Shown piece by piece: positions 39,217 through 60,479 of a DNA stretch of 64,000 nucleotides. Position 1 is the first letter of the stretch, and every line of letters begins with the position of its first letter. Location: positions 124,001-188,000 of IMG/VR virus record IMGVR_UViG_3300032242_002454. The stretch is one strand, 5' to 3'. Position numbers and translations under genes: made by a program. Below the pieces are notes generated by a model, which saw only the letters and a list, made by a program, of their open reading frames with translations, was not told the origin of the DNA and searched no databases.

Positions 39217-39957
39217 ATGAAAAGCTTAATTTTTCTTCTGGGTATCTTTTTATTTTTTTCAAATTCTCTTGCTGGGACAATTGATCCCAATGTTGAAGAT
39301 TCTAAGTATGTGGAGTATGGAAACAAATTTAAACATACTGTCAGGATAATTTGTTATGACGATAATGGACAGGCGGCAGGTTCTGCTGTGATAGTTGATA
39401 ATAATTGGATAATAACAGCAGCTCATGTTGTAAAAAATATGAAAGATCATCACATTATTGTTGATGGTAAACAATATAATTTAGATTTTATTGTGTGTCA
39501 TGAAAAATATAGCGATAATGTTTTTGGATATTATGATATTGCAATAGGTCATATAGCTGAACAGGTGGATATGTCTCCTTATCCAGATCTTTATGAAGAA
39601 GAGGACGAAGTAGGAAAAGTGGCAGCTATTGCTGGTGTTGGGCTTACTGGAAATTTTAATACTGGAGTGACCATTTCTGATGGTAAAAAAAGAGCTGGTT
39701 CAAACTATATTAAAAAAATAGAAAGAGGAACACTAGTATGCGATGCTTCCAGGCCCAGTCAAAAAATAACAGAACTTGAGTATCTTATTTGTAGTGGAGA
39801 TAGTGGTGGAGGTCTTTTTATAGATGGAAAACTTGCTGGAATAAATTCTTCTGTATTGGGGTATGATGGTAAGCCAGACTCAACGTATGGAGATGAAAGT
39901 TGTCATACAAGAATTAGTATGTATATTCCATGGATTAGAAACATTATTAAGAAATAA
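39217..39957 (+). CDS. secreted trypsin-like serine protease (S1)
   Basis: Signal peptide; ITAAHV, DIAI, GDSGGG triad. Confidence 0.93.
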   Translation: MKSLIFLLGIFLFFSNSLAGTIDPNVEDSKYVEYGNKFKHTVRIICYDDNGQAAGSAVIVDNNWIITAAHVVKNMKDHHIIVDGKQYNLDFIVCHEKYSDNVFGYYDIAIGHIAEQVDMSPYPDLYEEEDEVGKVAAIAGVGLTGNFNTGVTISDGKKRAGSNYIKKIERGTLVCDASRPSQKITELEYLICSGDSGGGLFIDGKLAGINSSVLGYDGKPDSTYGDESCHTRISMYIPWIRNIIKK

Positions 39958-39959
39958 TT

Positions 39960-40889
39960 ATGTTAAAAAAGAAACAATGCAAGCTTTTACCGCACACAAG
40001 AAAAGATATTTATGGTTTATCGGTAGGATCTAGTCAGTTCCATAGCTGGCCCATTGATAAATTCTCAGTTCCTCAACAATGGAGACATTCTCAAGGAGAA
40101 GGTGTAACTGTAGCAGTAATAGATACTGGATGCGATTTAAATCACGAAGATATTAAAGACAATATTGTAGATGGTTATAATTTCATAAATCCAGATCAAC
40201 CCCCACAAGATGATAATGGTCACGGAACTCACGTTGCTGGTACAATAGCTGCCGTGAACAATGGTGTAGGCATGGTAGGAGTCGCTCCACAAGCCAAGAT
40301 CATGCCTATTAAAGCACTTGGAGCCGATGGGTCAGGAATTAATAAAAACGTCGCTGAAGCGATTGTGTGGGCTGCTGACCACGGAGCAGATTTGATAACT
40401 ATGTCTCTAGGTTCAGAATATCCATCCATTCAGATAGAAAAAGCTATAGAGTATGCTAAATATAAAAATGTAATTATATTTTGTGCGGCAGGCAATAGTG
40501 GAATAGAGTCTGGCATCCAATATCCTGCTAAGTATAATAATACTATTAGTGTTGGAGCAATAGATGAAAAATTAAATATTTGTACATTTAGTTGTTGTGG
40601 AGAAGAGCTTGACTTTTTAGCTCCGGGAGCAGATATTATTAGTGCTGTACCTGGAAATGCTTATGCTTCTATGTCTGGAACAAGCATGGCAACACCATTT
40701 GCCGTAGGTTGTGCTGCGTTGTTTCTATCTTTTGCCAAAAAAATTAAGTTCGCTATGCTAGAGAATATGCTTAAATCATCAGACGACTATGTGTCTGTTT
40801 TTGCTAAAAAAGCCATGAAGCTACATCAGCAAAATTATACAGGAATAAAGAAATATGAAGGCTATGGTATCATTAGACCCATACTCTAA
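39960..40889 (+). CDS. subtilisin-like serine protease (S8)
   Basis: VAVIDTG, NGHGTHVAG, AAGN, GTSMATP. Confidence 0.96.
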   Translation: MLKKKQCKLLPHTRKDIYGLSVGSSQFHSWPIDKFSVPQQWRHSQGEGVTVAVIDTGCDLNHEDIKDNIVDGYNFINPDQPPQDDNGHGTHVAGTIAAVNNGVGMVGVAPQAKIMPIKALGADGSGINKNVAEAIVWAADHGADLITMSLGSEYPSIQIEKAIEYAKYKNVIIFCAAGNSGIESGIQYPAKYNNTISVGAIDEKLNICTFSCCGEELDFLAPGADIISAVPGNAYASMSGTSMATPFAVGCAALFLSFAKKIKFAMLENMLKSSDDYVSVFAKKAMKLHQQNYTGIKKYEGYGIIRPIL

Positions 40890-40965
40890 CTTAATCACCC
40901 TCTGCATAAGATATAGTTTTTTCTGGGTGTTGTGTCAAGCAGAAAAACTTTTTATCCGTAACCAC

Positions 40966-40994
40966 TTGACTTGTTTCACGTTGTCTCGTATCAT
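40966..40994 (+). promoter_or_regulatory. probable sigma70-type promoter
   Basis: TTGACT-17-TATCAT upstream of 41020. Confidence 0.55.
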
Positions 40995-41019
40995 AAACTC
41001 TGAAAGGTGAGCAAAAGAA

Positions 41020-41651
41020 ATGAACGATTTTGATTTTGAAAAGCGAAAAGTAAATAGACGACAGAATATTGAGAAGAAAACTACTGATAAAAAATCTGAT
41101 CAATATCAAAATAGAGATTTGAATAAGGTTAAAAAGGAATTCAAGAAAGCCAAAGAAGAAATCAGACAGGATGAACTTTGGGATTATTGGGAAGATGAAA
41201 TATCTTGAAGAAATAAAACCTGGTCAATTATTTTCATATAAAGAGAATAGGTTTATTTTAACCTCTGACTTTACAAAGTCCAATAAGAGATCTTGTATAA
41301 GTTTGAATAATGGTTTTGTTAGCTGGTTGCCCGATAATACTGTGGTAGATCTTTTAGATCTCTACTATAGAGATCACGATGGAAATATTGTCGCGGTAAA
41401 GGAATATAAAAATGAGTATACTGAAAAAACTGAAAAATTTCATTAAGGCTTTATGGTTCCATATCGGTGCTGGATTACCAAAGTCATCTCAAGAAGAAAT
41501 CAATAAAAGATTTGCCATTTGCCAAAAGTGTGATTTGTTTGATAATAAGTCTAGTCAATGTCTAGCTTGTGGTTGCAATCTGAGTCAGAAAAGTATTTTT
41601 TTAAATAAGCTAGCATGGGCAGACCAGAAATGTCCAATTAATAAATGGTAA
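41020..41651 (+). other. three small ORFs (41020..41208; ~41197..41446; 41412..41651 Cys-rich zinc-binding)
   Basis: CQKC...CLACGC...CP in the last. Confidence 0.7.
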
Positions 41652-41655
41652 AATA

Positions 41656-42204: not shown

Positions 42205-42363
42205 AACTATGGACAATAATCAATATTTGTATTTTTTATATCTAGCATGTGGAATCTATGGATTATGTCAGGGTCTATTTACCCCTGACCGTTCTTCATC
42301 AGGTTCTAAACCAGATAATATACTTGAGTACTTATTTCCACCCGGTTCAAAAAAGTAATATTT

Positions 42364-42903: not shown

Positions 42904-42910
42904 GCTAACA

Positions 42911-46174: not shown

Positions 46175-46185
46175 GGAGAAATACT

Positions 46186-46752: not shown

Positions 46753-46761
46753 GGAATCAAT

Positions 46762-48333: not shown

Positions 48334-48915
48334 ATGGAAAAAGAATTCGACAGTCTGTCTGCGTATATTACTTTAGCTAAAAAAATTATATCCAAGTTTG
48401 CTCCAACATTTTATAGTAATCTTCGTCAAGAATTACTATCTAATGAGGATGCTATAGCAGATATAGCTTCTGCTATTATGATTGGAGATTGGAGATGGGA
48501 TGAAAATAGATCAGGCTTTAATGGCAAGTCCAAGACTAAATATTCCTATAGAAATCAATGTGGTATTTGGGCGATTAAAACCTATCTTTCTAATAAATAT
48601 AGAAAGTGCAATACTCATTATTCTATAGATGCCACAGATGTCAATGATGTTAATTTTTCAGATAATATTAGTGATAAAGAAGAGTATGATCCTTCTCTTT
48701 TGGCTGAGAAAGAAGAATACAATGATGCTCTAAAATCTAATATAAATAACATTCTTAGTTGTGGTATTATTTCTGATAAGCAAAGAGATCAGATTAAACA
48801 GTATTATTTTGAAGAAAAAACACTGTCAGAGATCGGTAGAGATTTTGGAGTAACAAGAGAAGCAGTTAGACAAAATATTCAGAAGGGTCTTTCTAAAATC
48901 AGAGAATATGTATAA
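48334..48915 (+). CDS. RNA polymerase sigma factor (sigma70 family, regions 2+4)
   Basis: Region 4 HTH KTLSEIGRDFGVTREAVRQNIQKGLSKIR; region-2-like WDENR...KYSYRNQCGIWAI. Confidence 0.82.
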   Translation: MEKEFDSLSAYITLAKKIISKFAPTFYSNLRQELLSNEDAIADIASAIMIGDWRWDENRSGFNGKSKTKYSYRNQCGIWAIKTYLSNKYRKCNTHYSIDATDVNDVNFSDNISDKEEYDPSLLAEKEEYNDALKSNINNILSCGIISDKQRDQIKQYYFEEKTLSEIGRDFGVTREAVRQNIQKGLSKIREYV

Positions 48916-50089
48916 AACTAATGTCTGTTTATTTATTAGTTCTTTTGATCTAGAGAAAAATGAAAGATTTATTCTTTCAACTACAGAAGAAAAATATATT
49001 CCTTTGTCAATTGAACTTCAGGATTATCATAAAACAGTTCGTGATGCTTTGAGAGAATTATTTGAATCCACAGTTGTGATAGATTTTGAATGGATTAATC
49101 CTCTTTTGGTTGATGTTCTTAAAGAAGATGATTCCGTTAATATTCACTATGCTTGTACTATTCCTCCAGAAACAGAAATTAAACAGGGTTCTCGTATAAG
49201 TGTGCATTTGGCCATTATAAATAAAATTGCTAGAAAGTCATTATCATATGTTTAGTTTTTTAAAATCCATATTTCATTCTCGTAAGAAAGAAGAGACAAA
49301 AGAAAACTATTTATGTAGTATAAAAATAGAATTAAACCATGATAGTTCTATTAATATAGTGTGTTATTGGCCTGATTTAACAAATTTAGATGAAGATGTT
49401 ATTGATAATGTTGCCAATCCCTATGCTGGTTTATTATATCTATTAAATGGGGGCTCATTAAATCAAGATATTATTAAGGCTTTGTCTAATTTTCAAGAAA
49501 ATAATATTGAAGATTCTTATTTTGTAAATAAAGTTTTAACCAAATGGCTAGAATTAGCCACTCCTAAAATTGATTCAAAAAAATATAATATAGATCCGAT
49601 GATCAGACCATCTAGTGTATTTAAAAACTATACTAAGTAGATATTCTCGTATTTAAATAGGACAATATGAAAAACGTATATAATGAGGATAATCTAGTAG
49701 TTTGGCAAAAATGGTTTGATCCTTTTGGAGATGACGATACTCCAGAGCTAGGGCTTCATCGCACTAATGATGAAGAGTCCGATGATGTAGAAGGTAATTA
49801 CGAAGAAGTTAGAGAGATACAAAAACCTATGAGAGCTATTGCTACTCCTATGGGTTTGATACCTTATACAGAAAATACTGCATCTGGTAAGATTTTTAAT
49901 TTTTGGGTAGGCCATACCAACTTCAATGTTAATAATGATATTGTGGATATAATTGAAAATACTGATGGAGTAGAAACACTAGATGTTTTTACTAGATATA
50001 GGTTTCGTATTGCTATTGGCAAAGTATTTGATGACGCTAAGGTTATGAAAGAAATTAATGATCAAGTATATTATCACCTAGGTAATTAA
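48908..50089 (+). other. three hypothetical ORFs (48908..49255, ~49248..49640, 49667..50089)
   Basis: ORF track. Confidence 0.7.
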
Positions 50090-50090: not shown

Positions 50091-50768
50091 ATGGTAATAG
50101 CCTCTCCTAATGATAGTGAAATCAATGATATCCATAATTTTAATATAGATATCAAAAATAGAGAGGTATATCTACACTCATATATAGATGGTGCAGATGA
50201 AGGTGGTGTTGATTATAGGTCAGCTGTTGTATTTGAAAAAAATATCAGATATCTAAATACACTATCTTCCGAACCCATATTAGTTCATATGCACTTGCCG
50301 GGAGGAGAATGGCAAGACTGCTTAGGAATATATGATACTATTAGATTTTCTAAATCTAGAATTGTTGTACTAGCTTATGCAAAAGTAGAGTCCTCAAGTA
50401 GCGTCATATTCCAAGCTGCACCACTAAGGATTCTAACTCCAAATGCTACTATGCTAATTCATTATGGTTCATTTAGTATGGATAGTGAACACTCTAAGGC
50501 TGCTGCTAGTTCTATCAAATGGAATGAACAAGAGTGTGATAAGATGATTGAAATTTTTACCGACAGATGTATGGAAAGTGAACTAGCTAAACAAAAGAAT
50601 TGGAAGAAAATGATGGCCAGAAAACACATCACTTCCCAATTGGCTAATAAGTGTGATTGGATTTTAACTTCTAACGAAGCAGTAGAGTATGGGTTTGCAG
50701 ACGGTGTATTAGGTAGTAAGAAATACCCCAGTATTGAACTACTTAAAACACACAGAATTAAAAAATGA
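50091..50768 (+). CDS. ClpP-like protease subunit
   Basis: HLPGG...GIYDTI; Ser (KVESS), His (LIHYG), Asp (CDWILT); EAVEYGFAD. Confidence 0.82.
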   Translation: MVIASPNDSEINDIHNFNIDIKNREVYLHSYIDGADEGGVDYRSAVVFEKNIRYLNTLSSEPILVHMHLPGGEWQDCLGIYDTIRFSKSRIVVLAYAKVESSSSVIFQAAPLRILTPNATMLIHYGSFSMDSEHSKAAASSIKWNEQECDKMIEIFTDRCMESELAKQKNWKKMMARKHITSQLANKCDWILTSNEAVEYGFADGVLGSKKYPSIELLKTHRIKK

Positions 50769-51409
50769 TAATTGAATATTCAATATATGATATTTCTTTA
50801 TCTGATGAAGAAATAAAAAAACTATTAGCTGAAGCAGTTCAGTATAAACCAAATACAATTTCTGTATTATTACCACACATTAAAGTAGCTAAAAACATTT
50901 TAGCCAGTACTGGTATTAGTATTTCTACTCCAATAGATTATCCATTTGGTATCTTAGATACTAAAAATAGAGCAACTATTGTGGAGACAGCTATTAAATC
51001 TGGTGCTAACATCGTAAGCCTAGTTGCTCAACCATCTTTTTTTTGTAATCGTAAATACGATAAATTTAGAGAAGATATTAAAATCAATTTAGAAATATGC
51101 ACCCAAGCCTCTGTAGAACTAAGATACATGTTAGAGTATAGAGTATTCACATATGAGTTATTATACAAAGTTTCTCAAATCTTGATGGATTTTGGAATAG
51201 ATACCATATATCCTTCAACAGGACATTCTTTAGATGATATTAATGACAATATCCTCGCTGCTGCTCTAATCAATAAAAAAGTGCCAATTAATATCATTTG
51301 TAATGGTAATGTTTGGAATATTGGCCACATTAATAATATCAAGAAGATCGATCTTTATGGTATTAAGGTCAACTCTATTAATGCTTTACAACTATTATCA
51401 CAAAAATAA
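50765..51409 (+). CDS. deoxyribose-phosphate aldolase (DeoC)-like protein lacking catalytic lysines
   Basis: IDYPFG, AIKSGA, YMLE, YPSTG (vs KTSTG), ICNG (vs KASGG). Confidence 0.7.
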   Translation: MIIEYSIYDISLSDEEIKKLLAEAVQYKPNTISVLLPHIKVAKNILASTGISISTPIDYPFGILDTKNRATIVETAIKSGANIVSLVAQPSFFCNRKYDKFREDIKINLEICTQASVELRYMLEYRVFTYELLYKVSQILMDFGIDTIYPSTGHSLDDINDNILAAALINKKVPINIICNGNVWNIGHINNIKKIDLYGIKVNSINALQLLSQK

Positions 51410-51473: not shown

Positions 51474-52028
51474 ATGGCTATAGCAAAAACATCTGGTTCT
51501 GATTATACAGTACCTCCAAACGTAAAGTCCAGTGGCTCAGTTAATAACAGAGGCACAGTAGCTCGTGGTGGCTCAGTTGCTTCTGGTAAGCTCACAAACG
51601 TAGGCGTTAGTAGATATAACACAACAGTATTTGCTTCAACAGTTCTTGATAATAGTTGGGCTGATAAAGCTCTAAGTGCTGGCACTTTTGCTTATAATGA
51701 TAAGAATGGTGTTGCTATGAGAACCACATCAGATATAGCTGGTGTTGCTAATACTTCATTGTTAACTGGAGCTAATGTTCCAGGTATCACTCGTAGTATC
51801 CACAAACTTGAAACCCTTAGAACTCGTAGATTCACAACAGCTATCAGAGCTAACAAGTACAACCTTTATACAGGAACATTCGATAATGGTTATCCTGTTG
51901 TAGCTGTTGATACATTAGCCACAGATAATGCTGCAAATCCAACTCGTTCTGCTCCTGGTCAGCTTACTTATAAGCTTGGTGGCGTAGTACCAGTTATAAA
52001 TAATGATTACAAGGCTAAGACTGGCTGA
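51474..52028 (+). CDS. G/S/T-rich protein, possibly a virion structural protein
   Basis: Own promoter-like motif upstream and terminator downstream; biased codon usage. Confidence 0.55.
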   Translation: MAIAKTSGSDYTVPPNVKSSGSVNNRGTVARGGSVASGKLTNVGVSRYNTTVFASTVLDNSWADKALSAGTFAYNDKNGVAMRTTSDIAGVANTSLLTGANVPGITRSIHKLETLRTRRFTTAIRANKYNLYTGTFDNGYPVVAVDTLATDNAANPTRSAPGQLTYKLGGVVPVINNDYKAKTG

Positions 52029-52057: not shown

Positions 52058-52091
52058 AAAGCCAGCGATGCCTTGAGTGTCGTTGGCTTTT
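52058..52091 (+). terminator. intrinsic terminator
   Basis: AAAGCCAGCGATGC-CTTGA-GTGTCGTTGGCTTT then a T-rich tract. Confidence 0.75.
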
Positions 52092-52116: not shown

Positions 52117-52434
52117 ATGAGCGAAACAATTATTCATTTCTGGGAAAATATTGCTACAACCAGTATTGGCATTATTGTTACTATGGTAGGGTTTTGGGTG
52201 GCTATAGGACGAAATATGGCTACTAAATCAGAAGTTTTAGTAATGATTGAGACACAATCTCCATATGTACATGATCGTCAATTTATTATGGAAAGATTAA
52301 ATACTAATAAAGAAACCCAAGCGGCTTTTGCTAATGCTTTACAAAGAAACACTGAAGTTATGACAGAATTAAAAATTCAAATAGCAACACTTGGTAAAAC
52401 TCTAGAGGCTCTAGAAGACCGCATCGAAAAATAG
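52117..52434 (+). CDS. TM plus coiled-coil protein
   Basis: SIGIIVTMVGFWVAIG followed by heptads. Confidence 0.7.
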   Translation: MSETIIHFWENIATTSIGIIVTMVGFWVAIGRNMATKSEVLVMIETQSPYVHDRQFIMERLNTNKETQAAFANALQRNTEVMTELKIQIATLGKTLEALEDRIEK

Positions 52435-52473
52435 TGTATATAATTACAACCCCTTATTCTGGAGAATCAAACA

Positions 52474-52683
52474 ATGGCTAGACCATATACAGACGTTCAA
52501 GCTGCAATCAGTGGTAATGTGGTTAAAAATGGCACAGCAGTCGTATCAACAACATTTACTGGTAAATATTCAACAAATAACAATTACGTCAAGAACACAC
52601 CAGCAATCAGTACCATTTACAATAAATATGGCAATAAGTTCTATAATGGTATATTTGTTAAAGTATTACCTAGCGGCACATGA
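52474..52683 (+). CDS. hypothetical protein
   Basis: GGAG RBS. Confidence 0.6.
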   Translation: MARPYTDVQAAISGNVVKNGTAVVSTTFTGKYSTNNNYVKNTPAISTIYNKYGNKFYNGIFVKVLPSGT

Positions 52684-52719
52684 TATTTTTTGGCAATTTA
52701 AAATGGGAGTTTAACATTC

Positions 52720-53064
52720 ATGGTCAAACCCGGCTATAGAACTAGCGAATTTTGGTTCACTATGGTCAGCTTTGTTTTTAGTGGACTATATTTAATGGGA
52801 ATCATTGGAGAGAATAGTCAGAAAGAAGATTTGATTCAAGAAACAAGTAGAGGTCTAGAAGCTACAATACTTATTATAGGACAATTAACAGTTCTATTTA
52901 AGTATGTATCAAGTAGAGCTGAACTAAAGAAAACTTGGTGGAGCACAGCTAATCCAGAAGAAAGAAAAGTAGCAAATAGAGCTAATAGTAGAAAAAAGAA
53001 AAAACCCAAAAACACCACAGGAAAAACCAATGCCAAATCCGATAGTCCTATTACAGATCAATAA
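52720..53064 (+). CDS. holin-like two-TM protein
   Basis: KPGYRTSEFW N-terminus, two TM helices, strongly basic C-tail. Confidence 0.5.
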   Translation: MVKPGYRTSEFWFTMVSFVFSGLYLMGIIGENSQKEDLIQETSRGLEATILIIGQLTVLFKYVSSRAELKKTWWSTANPEERKVANRANSRKKKKPKNTTGKTNAKSDSPITDQ

Positions 53065-54339
53065 CATCGTTGACTCTGCTAAAGCTATGCTTAAACAAGC
53101 AGAATCAGTAGCAGTTCCTCAAGCATGGAATTTATTACAGTTAGCAATAGCAGATATAGTCCAACAAATTCAATTAACTCATCCAGAACTAAAAGGATCT
53201 AATAAAAAAGAAATAGCTATGAATGCCGTTTCTAGTTTTTATGATCAGGTTTTTTTAGTAGTAGAATTTCCCTTTCTACCACACTTGCTACAACCTATTA
53301 TACAAAAGTACGTTAAACAGCTGTTAATGATTTTAGTTGGCGCTTCTATAGATGCTATGGTTACTACCTTTAAAAATACTGGTGTTTTCAGTACTCCAAC
53401 AGTTGATAATACAGTCGATAATACCCCTAAAGTTTCAGATAAATGAGAAAGAGAGATTCCAATGAATTTCACAGAAAGTTTCCAAGAGTTTAGTAGTCGT
53501 TTGAGCACAATGGATTTGGCTCTTTATGCTGGTGCTGGTCTTGTACTATGGGTTTTATTTAAGGATAAGTTGAGTCCCGTACAAACATTCTTGGGTGGTC
53601 TATTAGCTAAAATGAAAGGCTCCACTCCTTCTTCTGTTGTACCAATTGTTGTACCATCAGTTGATGCTGTTGTTGTTCCAAAGTTAGCAGCTAATCAACC
53701 AGATGATACTTTTTTTAAGCTAGTTGTATCATGGAAGCAAACCAGAGATTTGGCTGTTCAAAGCGGTTGCGGCGAAGCAGTTAAGGTTGCTGACCAAATG
53801 TTTCCTTTCCTAAGTCCCAATGTTTGCAAAAAAGAGGATAAAGTATCATGAGCATGGATAAAAAAGTATTATTAGCACTAGGTGGTTTACTCATTTTAGT
53901 AGGTCTACTTAAGCCAGAGTTTTCTGATATGTTTAAGCCTAGACCAACTGTAGTAGATGTTCTTGAATTATCAGTACCAACAGATGAAGCTGTAAAAAAA
54001 GAAGCTGATGATGTTGTAATAGTTCTAAAAGAAGCTGGTATCAAGTCAGAAGCTAGGAAGCTAAGAGATTTATATATTGATTTAGCAAAGCTAGTTGAAC
54101 TTGACGGTGAAGACGAAGTAATTAAAAGTACTGAAGAAATTCGTCAAGCTAATAGTCTAGCTGGTATTATGCTCAGATTGGATATGAAAGGTAAATATCC
54201 AAATCTAGCTAAAGAAGCAAAAGAAGTAGTAGTTGCTTCTATTGGTGATGATCAAATTCTTTTATCAAAAGAGCTAAGAGTTAAAGCTGTAGAAGGTCTT
54301 AATGCTTTAGCTTGGGCTTGCAATGAAGGGTCAAAATAA
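53030..54339 (+). other. three membrane-associated hypothetical ORFs (53030..53446, 53462..53851, 53848..54339)
   Basis: Hydrophobic or N-terminal TM segments; coupled. Confidence 0.7.
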
Positions 54340-55265
54340 TGCCACGTTATTCTCCAAAAGAGCTTTACGATAACTATCGTCAAGGATTTAGTGGTTGCAT
54401 ATGGGAGCAACACGTATACGACCATTTTATGGAGAATGCAAAATATCCATTGTTTGGTGATGCTAGTAAAAAAATTAAAAATTCTGGTAAAGGGAAACTT
54501 TCAACACCGTATAAGAGTGTGTTAAGGTTTGAGAAGAATCCTTATAATGAAAGACAAACTGTCGGAGATTGTGTCAGTCATGGAACACGAAATGCTTGTG
54601 ATGTTACTAGAGCGGTAGAAATAGATGTAAATCACGAAAGAGAAGATTGGGTAACAAAAGGTGCAACGGAAGCTATTTATGGTGCTAGGGGTTTTTCTGG
54701 TGAAGGCATGAGTTGTGCTAGAGCCGCTGAATTTGTTAGTAAGATTGGTGGTATAGTTCTTAGAAAGAATTATCCCGGCATTGCTGACTTTAGTAAATAC
54801 AATGGCAATCTAGGTGCTGGCTGGGGAGGTCGAGGACTTCCAGATAAAGTATTAGACTTAGCCAATGATCATCAGATCAAAACTGCTTCATTAATTAGAA
54901 CAGTAGAAGAGGCTCGTGATGCTCTATCTAATGGCTATGGTATAGCAGTATGTTCTAATTATGGTTTTAGTAATACAAGAGATAAAAGGGGATTTGCTAA
55001 ACAATCTGGTAGCTGGGGGCATTGTATGGCTTGGATAGCATGTGATGATACTGGTAGTGAGCCAGCCTTTTTAGTCCAAAATAGCTGGGGAAAGTGGAAT
55101 GATGGTGGACATCCCGAATGGGGTCCAATTCCAGATGGTTCATTTTTAATTCATGTTGATGTAGCTGCTGGTATGCTTGCTATGAATGGCTCATATACAT
55201 TTAGCAGTTTTGACGGTTTTCCTCTCCAAAAGCTACCAAGCTACGGGTTTGAAGACTATCTCTAA
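54339..55265 (+). CDS. papain-like (C1A) cysteine peptidase
   Basis: Q-TVGDC (oxyanion Gln, catalytic Cys), GHCMA (His), QNSWG (Asn). Confidence 0.88.
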   Translation: MPRYSPKELYDNYRQGFSGCIWEQHVYDHFMENAKYPLFGDASKKIKNSGKGKLSTPYKSVLRFEKNPYNERQTVGDCVSHGTRNACDVTRAVEIDVNHEREDWVTKGATEAIYGARGFSGEGMSCARAAEFVSKIGGIVLRKNYPGIADFSKYNGNLGAGWGGRGLPDKVLDLANDHQIKTASLIRTVEEARDALSNGYGIAVCSNYGFSNTRDKRGFAKQSGSWGHCMAWIACDDTGSEPAFLVQNSWGKWNDGGHPEWGPIPDGSFLIHVDVAAGMLAMNGSYTFSSFDGFPLQKLPSYGFEDYL

Positions 55266-55343
55266 AATTCGCAATTAGCTATTTTAAACCATCATCTCTA
55301 TTAGGTGTATATATTTATATATCTAAATTCCTAGGAATATTTT

Positions 55344-55571
55344 ATGAACCTAAGAGAAAGATTAGAACTCCGCGCTGTCATTAACATGATCATTGGCATG
55401 ATTGAAACTTTGGCAAAACTATTTACCAAAGCTCAAAAAAAGTTTGGACCAAAACCTAAAATTGATAATCCAGACTCTCCAGTGAAACCCAATAGGCCAC
55501 GACCCTTGAAAAGAGTTGTGGATACTATTGATAATATTATACCTCTTCCATGGAGAGATAAAAATGAATAA
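55344..55571 (+). CDS. hypothetical protein
   Basis: ORF after GGTGTAT motif. Confidence 0.65.
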   Translation: MNLRERLELRAVINMIIGMIETLAKLFTKAQKKFGPKPKIDNPDSPVKPNRPRPLKRVVDTIDNIIPLPWRDKNE

Positions 55572-55920
55572 ATTATTCGTTGGTTTATTTTGCGTTAGTT
55601 TGTTATTTACTCAGTCTCATTACTATGGCTCAACAACGGCCCCGGTGACTCTTGCTGGAGGCATTATTAAAGCCAAGCATGTACAGGAAGTATCACAAAA
55701 GTATAAAAGAAAAGATTGTCCCGTTTGCAAGGGTAAGGGTTGGTATATGAGTGGTGATGGTATTCTTAAAATTGATTGCACATACTGTGAAGCAGATAAA
55801 GGATCGATTTCTGTAGGTCCAATTCAATCATTTAATCCAAAAGCCCCAACTCCAAAAGTATATTCAACATCACCAAATTGTCCTGATGGCAGTTGTCCTC
55901 TTAAATCCGTCAAAAAATAA
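55564..55920 (+). CDS. secreted protein with CxxCxGxG zinc motif
   Basis: Signal-like N-terminus; CPVCKGKG...CTYC; CPDGSCP. Confidence 0.7.
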   Translation: MNKLFVGLFCVSLLFTQSHYYGSTTAPVTLAGGIIKAKHVQEVSQKYKRKDCPVCKGKGWYMSGDGILKIDCTYCEADKGSISVGPIQSFNPKAPTPKVYSTSPNCPDGSCPLKSVKK

Positions 55921-55938
55921 TCAAGGTGGTTGAATCAT

Positions 55939-58170
55939 ATGTCTGATCCAAATACACCACCACCATTTAAGATAGTAGATGATGATTTAATTTATGTTAT
56001 TACTGGATACAATAAAATCAATTGTTTGCCAGACTCTAGAGAATCATCAATAGCTAATCTCAGAAAATATATCATAGATATGATTGGTGTTTCCGGAGTA
56101 GGCTTTTCCAGAGAAGGACCAGCAACAGTATTCTCTACTGCACAAGAAGATAATTTAATAGATATCAATTATTCTAGTTCCTATCCATATACTCAGAAAA
56201 TAGCAACTACTGGATTAAATAGTAAAACAGAAAATTTAATAGTAAAAGACTATGATACTATTTGGCCATATAGTGGAATACTCTATAATACTGGATTAAA
56301 TGCTGTTGTTGGAAATAATGTAGAAATACAATTTTCCACAGGAACACCGGCAGCAAATAAGTATGGTGGGGTTGGAGGAAAATATTTTAGTGGAATTATC
56401 TCTACAACAGGACTTAATTCTCGTACAGAGAATTTAATTGTTAGAGATTTTGAAACTTCCTGGCCTTATAGTGGTATTATCTACAATACTGGATTGAATG
56501 CCAGAATTGGAAATAATATGGAGATTCAATTCTCAACATCAACTCCGGCTGCTAATAAATACGGTGGTGTTGGAGGAAAATATACTAGCGGTATTATTTC
56601 TACTACTGGACTTAATTCTCGCACAGAAAATCTAATAGTAAGAGATTTTGAAACCGATTGGCCCTATAGCGGTGTTATCTATAATACTGGTTTGAATGCT
56701 GTTGTTGGAAATAATATGGAAATCCAATTTTCAACATCCACACCAGCAGCTAACAAATATGGTAGAGTTGGAGGTAAATATACTAGTGGCATAGTTTCAA
56801 CTACAGGATTAAATGCAAGAAGTGAAAATTTAATAGTAAGAGATTTTGAAAGAGCTTGGCCTTATAGTGGAGTAATTTACAATACTGGTTTGAATGCTAG
56901 AGTTGGTAATAATATGGAAATTCAATTTTCCACAGATACTCCCGCAGATGATAAATATGGTGGAGTTGGAGGTAAATATACCAGCGGTATTATTTCCACT
57001 ACTGGATTAAATTCCAGAACGGAAAACCTAATAGTCCGAGACTTTGAAACTGATTGGCCATATAGTGGTGTGATATATAATACAGGATTAAATGCTAGAG
57101 CTGGTAATTTAATACAAATTCAATATCAATCATCTTCTCCGGCTGGTGGTATTTATGGTGGAACCGAAGGAAAATATAAATCAGGTATTATTTCTACAAC
57201 CGGTTTAAATATGATAGATGGATCTAATATAGGTTATACTATAGGAACTTCTTTTCCTCATAAATATACTATTTTTACAGTTGACCAAGCTAGAACATCT
57301 ACTGACCCAATAACATTTATTAATAATAGCGCTAATACTATCAGTACTACATCTGGATATATAGATCCAGCAATGGTTATAGATTATAGTCCATTATATA
57401 CTTCAAAACCTGGTGAAAATATTAATTTGATTTCTTCTTTTAAATTTTTGACAGATGATAGTGGAGATAATGATTGGTATGTCTCATTTACTATGCCATT
57501 AGCTTCTACAATGAAAATAAAAGAATTGATCCCAGTATCAGGAGTATCATATTCAACTACTGCTAACTCATGTTATATGACAACAAGAAGCGTATATAAT
57601 CCAGAAACTGATGATTATATTAATGTTCCTTATTGTCAAACAACATTTAAAACTATTACAGACCCTAATCCTTCGGACTTAAGTGGTTGGACACCAGTAT
57701 CAGCAGCTATAACAGCAAAATCATTCTATTTTTCTATTCTATGTAGTGGAGGATCATCGTCTGAATTTGCAAAAGGAACATTAACATTTACTAATCCTAG
57801 TGGTGCGGCTTGTTATACTGCAAATGGTGGAGAGACATATAATTTTGGCGCAAGTTTTATTAAAGAAGCATATAGACCAAGTGGTTATGAGCTTGATCGT
57901 TTAAATCCTATGGAGATAGAATTTTTCCAACAATTATCAATTAATAGCAACACAATAAATAACTACAATGCTACCTCTCCTAAATTTAATATTTCTAATT
58001 TTGGATATACTAGAACATACAGAAAACTTATAGGATATGGTGATTTATGTATTGGAGATGCTTGTACCTATAATGCAACACCCGTATATAGGTATTATAC
58101 AGCAACTGCATATGGCCCAGCTTCATTCACAATAGGTAAAAGATCCTTTAGAACAACAAATGTATCATAA
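55939..58170 (+). CDS. large protein with five 66-aa tandem repeats
   Basis: Repeat TTGLNSRTENLIVRDFETDWPYSG...GKYTSGIIS. Confidence 0.85.
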   Translation: MSDPNTPPPFKIVDDDLIYVITGYNKINCLPDSRESSIANLRKYIIDMIGVSGVGFSREGPATVFSTAQEDNLIDINYSSSYPYTQKIATTGLNSKTENLIVKDYDTIWPYSGILYNTGLNAVVGNNVEIQFSTGTPAANKYGGVGGKYFSGIISTTGLNSRTENLIVRDFETSWPYSGIIYNTGLNARIGNNMEIQFSTSTPAANKYGGVGGKYTSGIISTTGLNSRTENLIVRDFETDWPYSGVIYNTGLNAVVGNNMEIQFSTSTPAANKYGRVGGKYTSGIVSTTGLNARSENLIVRDFERAWPYSGVIYNTGLNARVGNNMEIQFSTDTPADDKYGGVGGKYTSGIISTTGLNSRTENLIVRDFETDWPYSGVIYNTGLNARAGNLIQIQYQSSSPAGGIYGGTEGKYKSGIISTTGLNMIDGSNIGYTIGTSFPHKYTIFTVDQARTSTDPITFINNSANTISTTSGYIDPAMVIDYSPLYTSKPGENINLISSFKFLTDDSGDNDWYVSFTMPLASTMKIKELIPVSGVSYSTTANSCYMTTRSVYNPETDDYINVPYCQTTFKTITDPNPSDLSGWTPVSAAITAKSFYFSILCSGGSSSEFAKGTLTFTNPSGAACYTANGGETYNFGASFIKEAYRPSGYELDRLNPMEIEFFQQLSINSNTINNYNATSPKFNISNFGYTRTYRKLIGYGDLCIGDACTYNATPVYRYYTATAYGPASFTIGKRSFRTTNVS
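56206..57210 (+). repeat. 5.1 x 198-bp coding tandem repeat
   Basis: Unit starts at 56206, 56404, 56602, 56800, 56998, 57196. Confidence 0.92.
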
Positions 58171-58214
58171 GGTGTATCAAATTAAGATTCAATCATTTTA
58201 ATAAGGTGATAATT

Positions 58215-58619
58215 ATGACAACTCCAGATAATGCAAAACTCAAAGCTATAGCTATTAAAATTTTAGAAAAATCTAATGTTAAAAAAGACGAAGTATATGG
58301 ATTTGCTATTGTTACTATCCTAATGATCATTAGTATCATTCTCACCTGTGTAAGAATTTTACAAGAATGCAATAAAAATAAACTATCAGCTAGTTCTACA
58401 ACAGAAGATAAATATGCTATGTATGGTGAGCAGTTACATACTTTTAGTGAGCGTAGAGGCTGGTTTACAAAAATGAGAATTAAGAAAATTTTACGAAGAG
58501 AAATGAATAGAGAAGATTATGAAAAATATTCATTAAGTATTTTGAATGCTTTGTTAGAGACAGGAGAAGTTCTCACGGATGATGAGATTCAAACCCTAGT
58601 GGAGAATGCCAATGTTTAA
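58215..58619 (+). CDS. single-TM hypothetical protein
   Basis: FAIVTILMIISIILTCV. Confidence 0.7.
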   Translation: MTTPDNAKLKAIAIKILEKSNVKKDEVYGFAIVTILMIISIILTCVRILQECNKNKLSASSTTEDKYAMYGEQLHTFSERRGWFTKMRIKKILRREMNREDYEKYSLSILNALLETGEVLTDDEIQTLVENANV

Positions 58620-58863
58620 TATTTTAGTATGGTGTGTTTATGGTCTATTTGTGGGGTCTATTGCCAAAAGTTTAGTTCCCGGCGAAGAAAATTTTGGCTT
58701 TGTTAAAACCGTTGCTCTTGGAGTAGCTGGTTCTTATTTAGGTGGAGCTATAATGTATTTAATGGGACAATATAGTAGCATGAGTCCAGCGGGTATATTT
58801 ATGGGTGTTGCCGGTGGCACTCTTGCTCTTGTGCTTTATAATAAGGTTAATCAAATTAAGTGA
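58612..58863 (+). CDS. GlsB/YeaQ/YmgE (transglycosylase-associated) membrane protein
   Basis: GLFVGSIAKSLVPG...TVALGVAGSYLGG...GVAGG. Confidence 0.85.
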   Translation: MFNILVWCVYGLFVGSIAKSLVPGEENFGFVKTVALGVAGSYLGGAIMYLMGQYSSMSPAGIFMGVAGGTLALVLYNKVNQIK

Positions 58864-58898
58864 TTTTGATCTTATTACTTTAAAGTGACTGTGATACT

Positions 58899-60479
58899 AT
58901 GCTTACTCCTAGAGAATTATACAACCAATATACCTCTCAGATATATAATGATATTCATGGAAAAGGAACGCCATATGATCTAGTAAGATTAGTATATTTT
59001 CTGAAACATCTTAAAACACCTTGTTACAGAAGAACTCTCAATTCTATTGTAACTAATCCAAATGGGACAACATCTGAACAAAAAGATACTTGGAATACTA
59101 TTACTGATACTGGATTAGGAAAGCTTGGTATACCATTTAAATTTTTAACCAGAATAGATGCCGAAGCTTTTGAAGAAATTCAACCATCTATGGATAGTGG
59201 AACAGCTTTTGCTGTTAGAAATTCTTGTGATCTTACTAGAGCTTGTGATACAGAAATCAAAAAAGCTTATGATTTATGGGAAGCTAGGATGGCAACAGAG
59301 TATTTACAGCGTTTTGCTGGTAATTCTTTACCTGATTGTTTATTAATGCTGGGGCCTGATTTAGTATCAGAAGATACTGCTCTTAATAGATCAACAGGTT
59401 GTGGAGACCTATCCTGCATAACTAATACTAAGTTTGAAGACGAAGTAGTGGGTGCTATTGGTGCTCCTCATTCGTGTATGCGAAATAAAACTGGCAAAAG
59501 ATATTGTGGTAGCTGTGGTACTTGTGATATAGACCCAGAAGAAGATCCAGTAGGATTTGCTAATAATCCTTGCTGTACCTCACCAACTTGCGAAGATAAA
59601 ATTAATAAATGTTGTCATGGACCATTAACTTTAAGGTTTGATTTTACATATTTGCAGAGATCTGATGATAGCTTATTTGGTGGTACAGTTAATGCTGGAT
59701 GGGTGGATTCAATATTTAAACATATTGGTATTATTAAAAGAAAAAGTTATGGTGGTTATGCTAATTTCATAGATAGCAGTGGATCTAATTTTTATGCTAG
59801 TCCTGATAATGTATTTTTAAGATATATGCAATCTCAAAATGGATATGATTATACTAAAGATACGTCAACTTCTGGAACTATTGACAGAATCAAAACTATT
59901 TGTGGATTATTTGGTGATACAGAGACAATTGTTAAGAATATTAAAGATTTATTATTTAATGGATATGGGGTAGTACTATTTACTAATGTCGGTTTTCCTG
60001 ATATTAGAGATTCTACTGGATTAAGTTATCCAGATCGTAATTGGTATCATACCTACTCTATCATAGCTTACGATGATAGAAAAACTGAATTTAAAGAATG
60101 TGTATTTTTATTAGCAAACAGTTGGGGAGAATGGAATTCTGGAGGTAATCCTACTTGGGGACCAATACCTCCCGGAAGTTTTTTGGTAACTGAAAGTCAT
60201 TTAAAATGTATGTTAGATTTCAATAGAGCCCCAGACTATAAGGGTTGTAAATCTCAATTTTGTCCACCTCCATGTCCTACACCAGAAGATTTTGCTGCTT
60301 GCACAGATGAAGGGACATGTGTTCCTTTTGAGTGTACCGATAAACAAAAGGCTTTTGGTTTAGCTTTTGCTCTTTCTATGAAAGAAGGATTTCTTCTTCA
60401 AAAGTTAGATTATGATCAATTTACTAAGCCTATTTTACCAGTGCTCGACGGATCTATAGTTTACTTTAATCCAAATTAA
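58899..60479 (+). CDS. papain-fold protein with Cys-rich insertion, catalytic Cys apparently lost
   Basis: Paralog of 54339 (PRELY, RACD, EARMATE, WYH, ANSWG, PIPPGSFL); Q-PSMDSGTAF at the Cys site. Confidence 0.7.
   Translation: MLTPRELYNQYTSQIYNDIHGKGTPYDLVRLVYFLKHLKTPCYRRTLNSIVTNPNGTTSEQKDTWNTITDTGLGKLGIPFKFLTRIDAEAFEEIQPSMDSGTAFAVRNSCDLTRACDTEIKKAYDLWEARMATEYLQRFAGNSLPDCLLMLGPDLVSEDTALNRSTGCGDLSCITNTKFEDEVVGAIGAPHSCMRNKTGKRYCGSCGTCDIDPEEDPVGFANNPCCTSPTCEDKINKCCHGPLTLRFDFTYLQRSDDSLFGGTVNAGWVDSIFKHIGIIKRKSYGGYANFIDSSGSNFYASPDNVFLRYMQSQNGYDYTKDTSTSGTIDRIKTICGLFGDTETIVKNIKDLLFNGYGVVLFTNVGFPDIRDSTGLSYPDRNWYHTYSIIAYDDRKTEFKECVFLLANSWGEWNSGGNPTWGPIPPGSFLVTESHLKCMLDFNRAPDYKGCKSQFCPPPCPTPEDFAACTDEGTCVPFECTDKQKAFGLAFALSMKEGFLLQKLDYDQFTKPILPVLDGSIVYFNPN

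What the first reader, a model, noticed from the sequence alone, without database searches (positions are those of the whole stretch)
39217..60479. Protease arsenal plus membrane cluster: candidate protease-based lysis or entry system
The window encodes secreted trypsin (39217), subtilisin (39960) and two papain-fold proteins (54339, 58899). The papain genes sit in a run of holin-like and TM genes (52117, 52720, 53030, 53462, 53848, 58215, 58612) at the position where a lysis cassette would have an endolysin, yet no amidase or lysozyme is recognisable here. Inference: the phage breaches a largely proteinaceous envelope (planctomycete wall or S-layer) with holin-released or exported proteases. 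This would be an undescribed lysis architecture.
Basis: inference. Interest (0 to 1): 0.72.

Follow-up and report, generated by a model that had tools for sequence, protein, structure and literature searches.

The report
Phage papain-like envelope (lysis?) module
A complete 205-kb uncultured jumbo phage has no recognisable cell-wall-degrading enzyme; it carries instead a widespread, uncharacterised trio (membrane-anchored helper, papain-type cysteine protease, exported zinc-ribbon protein) that acts outside the cytoplasm and is the best candidate for how these phages break out of their host.

Summary
Window 39217-39957 is a trypsin-like protease with a signal peptide. 39960-40889 is a subtilisin without one. 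54339-55265 (g233) is a papain/C1-fold protein with an invariant Gln-Cys-His set. 58899-60479 (g238) is its paralogue but has Gly in place of the catalytic Cys. The genes around them are enriched in membrane proteins. Ten endolysin Pfam families are absent from the whole 204,625-bp genome.

The "arsenal" reading is only partly supported. The trypsin-subtilisin pair is a separate unit found only in close relatives. g238 and the large genes 55930-58170 and 60491-64498 are variable accessories.

The conserved core is a trio: g232 (membrane anchor plus helical domain), g233, and g234 (signal peptide plus CxxCxGxG zinc-ribbon motif). Other uncultured phages have these fused in pairs or all three in one protein, or carry Tat signals, signal anchors or lipoboxes. 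The module therefore works outside the cytoplasm.

Nineteen phage records that carry it, 11 of them complete, lack eight endolysin families. No isolated phage in the INPHARED collection (50,697 records) has it.

The best reading is a papain-type lysis enzyme with two exported partners. No activity or expression timing has been shown. A planctomycete host or S-layer target has no support.

The parts
53848..54339 (+). g232: N-terminal membrane anchor plus a ~125-residue helical domain. Partner of the peptidase; its stop codon overlaps the g233 start (ATGA).
   Evidence: Hydropathy. Present in 44 of 44 full-length related loci. jackhmmer from g232 finds residues ~1-160 of 17 homologues in which this domain is fused to the papain domain (alignment A5). 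g232-like domain present in 76 of 84 distant loci. In the fused-homologue model this region forms four long helices.
54339..55265 (+). g233: C1/papain-fold cysteine peptidase with Gln73, Cys78, His228 and Asn248. No signal peptide. Residues ~1-50 are placed like a zymogen pro-segment. Core gene of the module.
   Evidence: It is the most conserved gene of the block (median 85% identity in 44 relatives).
55344..55571 (+). orf75: small conserved protein with an amphipathic N-terminal helix and a Pro/Arg/Lys-rich tail. Role unknown.
   Evidence: ORF list. Homologues in 49 close and 9 distant loci at the same position.
55564..55920 (+). g234: exported small protein with a signal peptide and a CPVCKGKGW...GDG...CxxC zinc-ribbon (DnaJ-like CxxCxGxG) motif. 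Third member of the trio. The real start is probably the ATG at 55564, not the TTG at 55516.
   Evidence: Sequence. Weak DnaJ_CXXCXGXG and anti-TRAP matches. Homologue directly downstream of the papain gene in 73 of 84 distant loci; 72 of 73 have a hydrophobic N-terminus and at least 14 have a lipobox. Fused to the g232-like domain in 23 loci and to both partners in P0158.
52720..53064 (+). g229: small membrane protein with two hydrophobic segments and a very basic C-terminal tail. Holin-like in shape only.
   Evidence: Present in 44 of 44 relatives. No family match.
53030..53446 (+). g230: conserved protein of unknown function with no clear membrane segment.
   Evidence: Present in 44 of 44 relatives. 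Homologue upstream of the papain gene in distant locus L096.
53462..53851 (+). g231: small protein with one or two weak hydrophobic segments.
52117..52434 (+). g227: N-terminal membrane segment plus a coiled-coil-like C-terminal part. First gene after a terminator-like hairpin.
   Evidence: Present in 41 of 44 relatives.
52058..52090 (+). Terminator-like hairpin (14-bp stem) after gene 51474-52028. Marks the likely start of a new transcription unit.
58206..58619 (+). g236: single-pass membrane protein, preceded at 58171 by the motif GGTGTATCA.
   Evidence: GGTGTAT[ATC]A occurs 11 times in the genome, 8 of them in the 6.9% non-coding DNA, including upstream of structural and tail-fibre genes.
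58606..58863 (+). g237: small multi-pass membrane protein of the YeaQ/GlsB ('transglycosylase-associated') type.
   Evidence: PF04226 at 2e-4. PRK10457 at 6.5e-10, below the curated cut-off. Present in 44 of 44 relatives.
58899..60479 (+). g238: accessory paralogue of g233 with a Cys-rich insertion. Catalytic Cys replaced by Gly; conserved Ser before it; His and Asn kept. Probable pseudo-enzyme or altered enzyme.
55930..58170 (+). g235: 746-residue protein with five ~132-residue tandem repeats. A variable insertion inside the module, not part of its core.
   Evidence: Sequence. Present in only 3 of 44 relatives. No family match.
39217..39957 (+). Trypsin-like serine protease with a signal peptide. 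Separate unit, not linked to the module by any evidence.
   Evidence: Conserved next to the subtilisin in 9 of 9 complete close relatives and absent from distant carriers of the module.
39960..40889 (+). Subtilisin-like (S8) serine protease without a signal peptide or pro-domain.

Best explanation
The core of the finding is a three-part module, g232-g233-g234, embedded in a conserved operon of small membrane proteins (about 52117-58863).

- g233 is a papain-family (C1-fold) cysteine peptidase made in the cytoplasm without an export signal.
- g232 is anchored in the cytoplasmic membrane with its helical domain outside.
- g234 is exported by a signal peptide and carries a zinc-ribbon or redox-type Cys motif.

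Proposed mechanism (inferred). Late in infection, one of the neighbouring small membrane proteins (g229, g231, g236 or g237) permeabilises the membrane. g233 then reaches the periplasm and meets g232 and g234. There it is activated, either by loss or displacement of its pro-segment-like N-terminus or by thiol control of Cys78. It then cuts peptide bonds that hold the envelope together: peptidoglycan stem peptides or cross-links, or protein tethers of the wall. In this reading g233 is the phage's endolysin equivalent. The canonical muralytic enzyme is absent and this module stands in its place.

Shown: the fold and catalytic residues, the trio's conservation and fusions, export signals in homologues, and the absence of known endolysin families.

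Inferred: release by a holin, activation, substrate, timing, and the lysis role itself.

The trypsin-subtilisin pair and g238 are not needed for this model.
For: 1. Fold and active site.
- Gln73, Cys78 and His228 are invariant in 47 diverse homologues.
- The family profile hits papain-family structures.
- The model has pLDDT 93 and matches xylellain at Z 20.7 and procathepsins at Z 17-19.5.

2. The trio is one functional unit.
- The g232 domain is fused N-terminally to the papain domain in 17 representative proteins.
- g232-like and g234-like parts are fused in 23 of 84 distant loci.
- P0158 carries all three parts in one chain: residues 3-161, 269-540 and 593-621.
- The g234 homologue lies directly downstream of the papain gene in 73 of 84 distant loci.

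3. It acts outside the cytoplasm.
- Fused forms start with a signal anchor that has basic residues before it and an acidic or Pro-rich stretch after it.
- Four representatives have Tat-type signals, for example the RRHFL motif in P0125.
- Fifteen have N-terminal anchors or signal peptides; 125 have none. This mix resembles the one known for endolysins.
- 72 of 73 g234 homologues have hydrophobic N-termini, and at least 14 have lipoboxes.

4. No canonical lysin.
- Ten informative endolysin families are absent from this complete genome, and the positive control worked. PF05838 was also not found, but nothing rang in its controls.
- Three Pfam sweeps of 136 ORFs found none.
- Eight families are absent from 19 other carriers, 11 of them complete, including two distant genomes of 167 and 131 kb.

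5. Core-gene behaviour.
- g233 is the most conserved gene of the block.
- The family has 1430 clusters at 50% identity.
- Homologues host inteins at the two catalytic motifs.

6. Context.
- The genes around the trio are enriched in membrane proteins (p = 0.0018).
- A motif shared with structural genes lies upstream of g236.
Against: - No activity, substrate or expression time is known.
- I know of no characterised peptidoglycan hydrolase in the C1 family. The structural neighbours are protein-cutting enzymes.
- g233 itself has no export signal, and no neighbour matches a holin or spanin family.
- A muralytic enzyme of an unrecognised family could hide among the many unannotated ORFs. Those include ORFs under 95 residues and proteins over 800 residues, which were covered only by the six-frame family searches. 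The family list from the third sweep was cut at 25 of 31.
- Complex prediction for g233 with the g232 domain gave no verdict.
- There is a second membrane-protein-rich gene run at about 105-111 kb of the genome.
- The host is unknown, so the nature of its wall is unknown.
Confidence: 0.45

Rival explanations
1. The trio acts in the periplasm during lysis but is not the wall-degrading enzyme. It cuts protein links between outer membrane, wall and inner membrane, or otherwise handles the last envelope layer, as spanins do. An unrecognised muralytic enzyme exists elsewhere in the genome.
For: The shapes of g232 (membrane anchor plus periplasmic helical domain) and g234 (exported, a lipoprotein in at least 14 distant homologues, Cys-rich) recall inner- and outer-membrane spanins. 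C1-fold relatives cut proteins; Cwp84 processes an S-layer protein (Z 17). Many ORFs remain unannotated.
Against: Ten informative endolysin families are absent here and eight are absent in 19 other carriers. g234 in this phage has no lipobox. There is no spanin family match. To my knowledge, fusion of an enzyme to spanin-like parts is not a known spanin feature.
Confidence: 0.17
2. The trio is a periplasmic protease system with a non-lysis role, for example destroying or trimming host receptors or envelope proteins. That could serve superinfection exclusion, prevent progeny from re-adsorbing, or remodel the envelope during infection.
For: The export signals and fusions show only the location, not the purpose. 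A redox partner next to the peptidase (a thioredoxin-like gene in L096; the Cys motif in g234) would suit any periplasmic cysteine protease.
Against: Such functions are usually accessory and variable. This gene is the most conserved of its block, spans 1430 clusters at 50% identity and hosts inteins at its catalytic motifs. Most members lack export signals, so they cannot reach the periplasm until the membrane is breached. This reading also leaves the missing endolysin unexplained.
Confidence: 0.2
3. One reading: trypsin, subtilisin and both papain-fold proteins form one arsenal that digests a largely proteinaceous envelope (planctomycete wall or S-layer) for lysis or entry.
For: All four genes are real. 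The trypsin has a signal peptide. One bacterial cluster near the family in the ESM Atlas is mostly Planctomycetota. Cwp84, an S-layer-processing protease, is a structural neighbour.
Against: The trypsin-subtilisin pair occurs only in close relatives and is absent from distant complete carriers of the papain module. The subtilisin has no signal. g238 lacks the nucleophile Cys and is accessory. The two loci are 13 kb apart in different gene neighbourhoods. Sec, Tat and lipoprotein signals argue against virion delivery. The genome is about 33% G+C. From general knowledge, planctomycetes do have peptidoglycan. No host evidence was obtained.
Confidence: 0.06
4. The proteases are virion-maturation or cytoplasmic enzymes (head maturation, host protein turnover, anti-defence) with no action on the envelope.
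For: A ClpP-like protease matching head-maturation PHROGs lies just upstream at 50091-50768. The subtilisin and g233 have no signal peptides.
Against: For g233, homologues are fused to signal anchors, carry Tat signals, and are fused to a part that is itself exported in split versions. The genes next to the ClpP-like gene are metabolic rather than a head module: a DeoC-like gene (judged by eye only) and a glycosyltransferase. For the subtilisin this rival remains open.
Confidence: 0.08

Closest known systems
Papain family (MEROPS C1, clan CA): xylellain (3ois), procathepsins B/K/L, pro-Der p 1, Cwp84
   Same: Same two-lobed fold (Z 17-21) and the same order of Gln, Cys, His and Asn with the Asn-Ser-Trp motif. 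The N-terminal ~50 residues superpose on the last part of zymogen pro-peptides.
   Different: 12-16% identity. g233 has no match to the Pfam model. It is phage-encoded, has no signal peptide of its own, and always comes with two exported partner proteins or domains that no described C1 enzyme has.
Canonical holin-endolysin-spanin lysis cassettes of phages of Gram-negative bacteria (lambda S/R/Rz/Rz1 type)
   Same: A signal-less hydrolase encoded among small membrane proteins. Relatives of the hydrolase come either signal-less or with an N-terminal anchor or export signal, as endolysins do. A membrane-anchored periplasmic helical protein and an exported, sometimes lipidated, small Cys-containing protein sit beside it. 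It is the only candidate envelope hydrolase in the genome.
   Different: The enzyme is a C1-fold peptidase, not a glycosidase, amidase or known wall peptidase. No holin or spanin family matches. The partners are found fused to the enzyme. The partner genes are not nested or overlapped in the Rz/Rz1 manner.
Cysteine-peptidase endolysin domains of the same clan (CHAP, NlpC/P60, Amidase_5, pseudomurein endoisopeptidases PeiW/PeiP/PeiR)
   Same: Papain-like Cys-His catalytic core used by phages to cut wall peptides. PeiR appears as a weaker structural neighbour (Z 10.8).
   Different: CHAP and NlpC/P60 models find nothing in this genome. g233 has the full two-domain C1 architecture with a Gln oxyanion residue and a pro-segment-like N-terminus, not the minimal fold of those families.
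SAR (signal-anchor-release) endolysins such as P1 Lyz, with disulfide caging of the catalytic Cys
   Same: Fused homologues are tethered by an N-terminal membrane segment. A catalytic Cys must work in the oxidising periplasm, next to a Cys-motif or thioredoxin-like partner.
   Different: g233 itself has no anchor. No evidence of release or of disulfide isomerisation. The fold is unrelated to lysozyme.

Membership tests
Peptidase family C1 (papain), clan CA | Catalytic Gln, Cys, His and Asn in that order | tested here: met
   Gln73, Cys78 and His228 are invariant in 47 homologues. Asn248 is the majority residue, followed by near-invariant Ser249-Trp250.
Peptidase family C1 (papain), clan CA | Two-lobed papain fold | tested here: met
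   Model pLDDT 93.2. Foldseek 1.4e-9 to xylellain. VIA-align Z 20.7 over 234 residues.
Peptidase family C1 (papain), clan CA | Match to the curated sequence model PF00112 above its cut-off | tested here: not met
   g233 and g238 have no Pfam hit. Only 9 of 47 homologues give weak hits, the best at 3.6e-4.
Peptidase family C1 (papain), clan CA | Peptidase activity | not testable with these tools
   Needs an enzyme assay.
Peptidase family C1 (applied to g238, 58899-60479) | Nucleophile Cys | tested here: not met
   Gly at the Cys position in g238 and in 10 of its 11 orthologues (Thr in the eleventh, L090), with Ser before it in 10 of 11. His and Asn are kept in 10 of 11.
Phage endolysin (functional class) | A recognised peptidoglycan-hydrolase catalytic domain | tested here: not met
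   No lysozyme, transglycosylase, amidase, M15, M23, CHAP or NlpC/P60 match anywhere in the genome.
Phage endolysin (functional class) | Site of action outside the cytoplasmic membrane | tested here: inconclusive
   Met for homologues: Tat signals, signal anchors, and fusion to an exported part. g233 itself has no signal and would need a membrane lesion.
Phage endolysin (functional class) | Degrades the host wall and is required for lysis | not testable with these tools
   Needs sacculus assays and genetics.
Holins | Small membrane protein with a charged C-terminus encoded beside the lysin, matching a known holin family | tested here: inconclusive
   g229, g231, g236 and g237 are small membrane proteins, and g229 has a very basic tail. 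None matches a holin family in Pfam, PHROGs or NCBIfam.
Two-component spanins | Inner-membrane protein with N-terminal anchor and periplasmic coiled coil, plus a small outer-membrane lipoprotein with a lipobox | tested here: inconclusive
   g232 has an anchor plus a helical domain. g234 has a signal peptide but no lipobox in this phage; at least 14 distant homologues have one. No family match.
Head-maturation (prohead) proteases | ClpP/S49-type or herpesvirus-type serine protease fold, encoded in the head module | tested here: not met
   g233 has a papain fold and is linked to exported partners. The ClpP-like gene is a different one, at 50091-50768.
Trypsin family S1 (39217-39957) | Pfam match above cut-off and a His/Asp/Ser triad | tested here: met
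   PF00089 at 64.9 bits against a cut-off of 20.6. TAAH, DIA and GDSGG motifs are visible in the sequence.
Subtilase family S8 (39960-40889) | Pfam match above cut-off and an Asp/His/Ser triad | tested here: met
   PF00082 at 197.6 bits. DTG, HGTH and GTSMA motifs are present.

The most novel reading that the evidence does not exclude
A large group of uncultured phages, with no cultured member, has replaced the canonical endolysin (and perhaps the spanins) by a latent papain-family cysteine peptidase. The enzyme works in the periplasm with a membrane-anchored helical partner and an exported zinc-ribbon or lipoprotein partner. This would be a new enzymatic class of phage lysis system with its own activation logic: pro-segment and/or thiol control.
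Probability: 0.4. Interest if true: 0.85.

Novelty: new variant of a known kind. Interest (0 to 1): 0.68.

Why it matters
How tailed phages break the cell envelope is thought to be well understood: a holin, a muralytic endolysin, then spanins. Here a complete jumbo phage genome and at least 11 other complete genomes show none of the usual endolysin families.

They share instead a strongly conserved papain-type peptidase tied by gene fusions to two exported partners. The family is large. It has 1430 clusters at 50% identity and hundreds of IMG/VR contigs, and it has no member among 50,697 isolated phage genomes.

If it is the lysis enzyme, three things follow.
- It adds a new catalytic class to endolysins.
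- It offers a new source of envelope-active enzymes.
- It explains why endolysins cannot be annotated in many environmental phage genomes.

If it is not, these phages still need an undiscovered wall-degrading enzyme, which is also worth knowing.

The inteins inserted at the two catalytic motifs of homologues are an independent sign that the gene is important to the phage.

Tried and rejected
- Complex prediction of g233 with the soluble part of g232 gave no verdict (score 0.01). It counts neither for nor against binding.
- Pfam, PHROGs and NCBIfam searches of all small genes in the block found no holin, antiholin or spanin family.
- DNA and protein searches against 50,697 isolated phages gave only short unrelated DNA matches and no homologue of g233. 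No annotated relative could be used.
- Host identification failed.
  - Homologues of the GDP-mannose dehydratase carry no organism names.
  - The only genome contigs match is a 141-kb contig of an unclassified 'MAG: bacterium'.
  - Cluster look-ups gave one partial 'Solirubrobacterales' MAG fragment, which proves nothing.
- Locus searches that failed:
  - A search with the whole family alignment failed for lack of a conserved stretch.
  - A search with P0125 found nothing in IMG/VR.
- T4-type late promoters (TATAAATA) are not enriched upstream of genes. The generic sigma-70 scan was at chance level.
- I first took 50091-50768 for the prohead protease of an adjacent head module. It is ClpP-like, and the gene after it looks like a DeoC-type aldolase by eye. 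I therefore dropped the idea that the block belongs to a head module.
- Limits of the lysin screen:
  - ORFs under 95 residues, one ORF outside my loci (genome 17151-17642) and proteins over 800 residues were not in the Pfam sweeps.
  - The third sweep lists only 25 of 31 families.
  - For PF05838 (both searches) and for PF00182 in the 19-record search, nothing rang in the control genomes, so those negatives are weaker.

Full report
**What the window is.** The window is bases 124001-188000 of a 204,625-bp IMG/VR virus record with direct terminal repeats, rated 100% complete. G+C is about 33%.

It is a tailed jumbo phage. Supporting features:
- A minus-strand arm of tail-fibre and structural genes, with proteins of up to 5022 residues.
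- A split family-B-type DNA polymerase, primase, ligase, UvsX-like recombinase and ribonucleotide reductase.
- rIIA/rIIB and ten tRNA genes.
- Bacterial-type functions: a Sigma70 region-4 protein, ClpP, SSB and PhoH.

It has no close relative among 50,697 isolated phages. It has many relatives in IMG/VR, on contigs of up to 244 kb.

**Checking the observation.** The trypsin gene (39217-39957; PF00089 1.2e-17) and the subtilisin gene (39960-40889; PF00082 3.7e-58) are real. Both have intact catalytic motifs. Only the trypsin has a signal peptide.

The gene at 54339-55265 (g233) has no Pfam hit of its own, but the papain assignment is sound.
- In 47 homologues down to 32% identity, Gln73, Cys78 and His228 are invariant, and Asn248 is the majority residue before near-invariant Ser249-Trp250.
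- Nine of the 47 give weak Peptidase_C1 hits.
- The family profile finds papain-family structures, with caricain at 2e-5.
- The AlphaFold model (pLDDT 93.2) matches xylellain and procathepsins (Foldseek 1e-9 to 1e-7; Z 17-21).
- It also matches 'Peptidase C1A' clusters in AlphaFold DB at 3e-22.

Mature papain-type enzymes align from about residue 50 of the model. Zymogens align from residue 5, starting inside their pro-peptides. The first ~50 residues therefore sit like a pro-segment. This is an inference from a predicted structure.

The gene at 58899-60479 (g238) is a paralogue (6e-24). In g238 and its orthologues the nucleophile Cys is replaced by Gly, preceded by a conserved Ser, while His and Asn are retained.

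The surrounding genes are enriched in hydrophobic segments: 6 of 11 against 32 of 249 elsewhere (p = 0.0018). None matches a holin or spanin family, and 53030-53446 has no clear membrane segment.

**Is there an endolysin elsewhere?** Six-frame searches of the whole genome found nothing above cut-off for these families:
- Phage_lysozyme, Amidase_2, SLT and Peptidase_M23
- Amidase_3, Glyco_hydro_25, NLPC_P60 and CHAP
- Peptidase_M15_4, Glyco_hydro_19 and Glyco_hydro_108

The only match of any kind was 12.7 bits to Peptidase_M15_4 inside the DNA polymerase. For Glyco_hydro_108 nothing rang in the control genomes either, so that negative says little. The same method found the trypsin gene at 9.9e-19, so for the other ten families the negatives are meaningful.

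Pfam scans of 136 ORFs of 95-800 residues showed many replication and sugar-metabolism enzymes and an alginate lyase. They showed no peptidoglycan hydrolase. One of the three lists was truncated at 25 of 31 families.

**What is conserved.** Among 44 related loci with full flanks:
- g229, g230, g231, g232, g233, g234, g236 and g237 are present in all 44.
- g233 is the most conserved, at a median of 85% identity.
- The 746-residue repeat protein (55930-58170) is present in 3 of 44.
- The 1335-residue protein starting at 60491 is present in 10 of 44.

A true orthologue of g238 is present in about 11 of 80 loci. A small ORF at 55344-55571 between g233 and g234 is also conserved.

A terminator-like hairpin at 52058-52090 precedes the block.

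The motif GGTGTAT[ATC]A occurs 11 times in the genome, and 8 of these lie in the 6.9% of the genome that is non-coding. It sits upstream of structural and tail-fibre genes and also 35 bases upstream of g236. This is a weak hint of co-regulation with late genes.

**The key result: a trio linked by gene fusions and export signals.** The g233 family has 1430 clusters at 50% identity.

Among the best 150 representatives, many longer proteins start with a hydrophobic anchor followed by a ~130-residue helical domain with the motifs 'DLAxFY' and 'AIAWAC'. This region is homologous to g232: jackhmmer from g232 finds residues ~1-160 of 17 such fusions (alignment). So g232 plus g233, whose stop and start codons overlap, is the split form of a single membrane-anchored protein.

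In the fusions the residues before the anchor are basic. Those after it are acidic or proline-rich, which places the rest of the protein outside.

Four representatives carry Tat-type signals, for example the 'RRHFL' motif in P0125. Fifteen carry anchors or signal peptides, and 125 carry none.

In the phage contig of P0125, a g232 homologue lies directly upstream and a thioredoxin-like gene directly downstream.

In 84 more distant IMG/VR loci, where the papain gene is 42-49% identical to the query homologue P0172:
- A g234 homologue follows the papain gene in 73 loci.
- 72 of these 73 have a hydrophobic N-terminus, and at least 14 have a lipobox.
- All share the Cys motif seen in g234 (CxxCxGxGW...GDGH...CPxC).
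- In 23 loci the g232-like and g234-like parts are fused.
- In P0158 all three parts are in one 642-residue chain.

Because g234 is exported on its own in the split versions, the fused papain domain must also lie outside the cytoplasm.

A model of a fused homologue (pLDDT 87, pTM 0.81) shows four long helices ahead of the papain domain. The tools report no inter-domain contacts, so I draw no conclusion on how the two parts pack.

**Do other carriers have endolysins?** I searched 19 IMG/VR records that carry the family. Eleven are rated complete, including two distant genomes of 167 and 131 kb. None has a match above cut-off to Phage_lysozyme, Amidase_2, SLT, Glyco_hydro_108, Peptidase_M15_4, Glyco_hydro_19, Peptidase_M23 or NLPC_P60. 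The close relatives are not independent of this genome. The two distant complete genomes are.

**The serine proteases.** The trypsin-subtilisin pair is adjacent and conserved in all nine complete close relatives, at 44-90% and 57-97% identity. It is absent from the distant carriers of the papain module. It lies between an HNH endonuclease gene, an actin-like (Volactin) gene and a RuvB-like gene.

Nothing links it to the 52-60 kb block. Its role is open. The periplasmic trypsin may act on the envelope. The signal-less subtilisin may act on cytoplasmic proteins.

**Explanation.** The best-supported reading is that g232-g233-g234 is an envelope-directed module with g233 as the lytic enzyme. g233 is made in the cytoplasm and released through a membrane lesion made by one of the neighbouring small membrane proteins. 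It is then activated in the periplasm next to its two pre-positioned partners.

The pattern of signal-less, anchored and Tat-exported relatives mirrors what is known for endolysins. This comparison rests on general knowledge of canonical, SAR and signal-peptide endolysins.

The Cys-motif or thioredoxin-like partner suggests thiol control of the catalytic Cys in an oxidising compartment, by analogy with disulfide caging in P1 Lyz. That is an analogy only.

The substrate is unknown. It could be wall peptides, as for the clan-related CHAP, NlpC/P60 and pseudomurein endoisopeptidase enzymes. It could also be protein tethers of the envelope. I put this reading at about 0.45. The rivals are:
- a spanin-like or tether-cutting accessory role with a hidden muralytic enzyme elsewhere (0.17);
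- a non-lysis periplasmic role (0.20);
- a cytoplasmic or maturation role (0.08);

**Comparison with what is known.** The enzyme belongs structurally to the papain (C1) family but fails its curated sequence model. The gene arrangement works like a lysis cassette, but no defining family of holins, endolysins or spanins is matched.

My literature searches found no description of a C1-type phage lysis enzyme or of this trio. A 2023 classification of papain-like proteinases lists only CHAP, NlpC/P60, Amidase_5 and pseudomurein endoisopeptidases as phage wall enzymes (PMC10318531).

Automatic annotation already labels related ESM Atlas clusters 'Peptidase C1A'. These clusters are mostly viral. The fold assignment is therefore not new. 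The trio, its location and the missing endolysin are.

**Verdict.** It is wrong in lumping the four proteases together and in the proposed host and target. I rate it a new variant of a known kind of system, a phage lysis cassette, with function still to be shown.

Noticed in passing
Homologues of window 54339-55265: P0121, P0122, P0132, P0149, P0214: Many homologues of the papain-like protein carry one or two inteins (Intein_splicing, Hint and LAGLIDADG domains). They are inserted at about the catalytic Cys78 and at His228-Cys229. Inteins in a phage protease-like gene are unusual and point to a gene under strong constraint.
   Followed up: partly
window 36624-38883: A RuvB-like AAA+ protein (RuvB_N 1.2e-46), a small membrane protein and an actin-like protein matching the archaeal Volactin family (PF25216, 1.1e-63) are encoded side by side, just upstream of the HNH, trypsin and subtilisin genes.
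   Followed up: no
genome 101.5-121 kb (outside the window, upstream of it): Sixteen copies, on both strands, of a unit made of a G+C-rich hairpin followed by TTGACGTAAGTC(C/G)TT, between small genes. They look like terminator plus early-promoter units.
   Followed up: no
window 58171; also genome 61634, 76094, 82507, 113559, 145329, 153197, 198039: The motif GGTGTAT[ATC]A occurs 11 times in the genome, 8 of them in the 6.9% non-coding DNA, 7-69 bases upstream of genes including tail-fibre and structural genes. It is a candidate middle or late promoter element.
   Followed up: partly
window 55930-58170: A 746-residue protein with five ~132-residue tandem repeats is inserted between g234 and g236. 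It is present in only 3 of 44 related loci and has no family match.
   Followed up: partly
window 50091-51409: A ClpP-like protease (CLP_protease 6.7e-15; it also matches 'head maturation protease' PHROGs) is followed by a gene that looks like a deoxyribose-phosphate aldolase by eye. Both are conserved in 39 of 44 relatives.
   Followed up: partly
window 29889-33566: rIIA-like (896 residues, 3.8e-112) and rIIB-like (1.5e-71) genes are present. They are of interest because in T4 these proteins relate to lysis timing and exclusion.
   Followed up: no
genome 111994-112377 (outside the window): A 127-residue protein contains a 'GLKEAKD' motif. One member of the scanned set containing it (the tool does not say which) matched the ribosomal protein L7/L12 C-terminal domain (PF00542, 2e-5).
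   Followed up: no
genome 3437-7832 (outside the window): The DNA polymerase is split into two ORFs (624 and 543 residues, matching the first and second halves of phrog_405), with two small ORFs between them.
   Followed up: no
genome about 105.5-111 kb (outside the window): A second run of genes rich in membrane segments (6 of 11) lies among the small early-looking genes. No lysin was found there.
   Followed up: partly
window 48334-48915: A Sigma70 region-4 protein is conserved in relatives and in the distant locus L014, upstream of the papain module in the same gene order (glycosyltransferase, sigma-like, 49667-50089, 51474-52028, papain).
   Followed up: partly
structural arm of the genome (one of the ORFs in alignment A3): One ORF matches an alginate lyase domain (PF05426, 3e-48). 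It is probably a virion-borne polysaccharide depolymerase and a possible clue to a capsule-bearing host.
   Followed up: no
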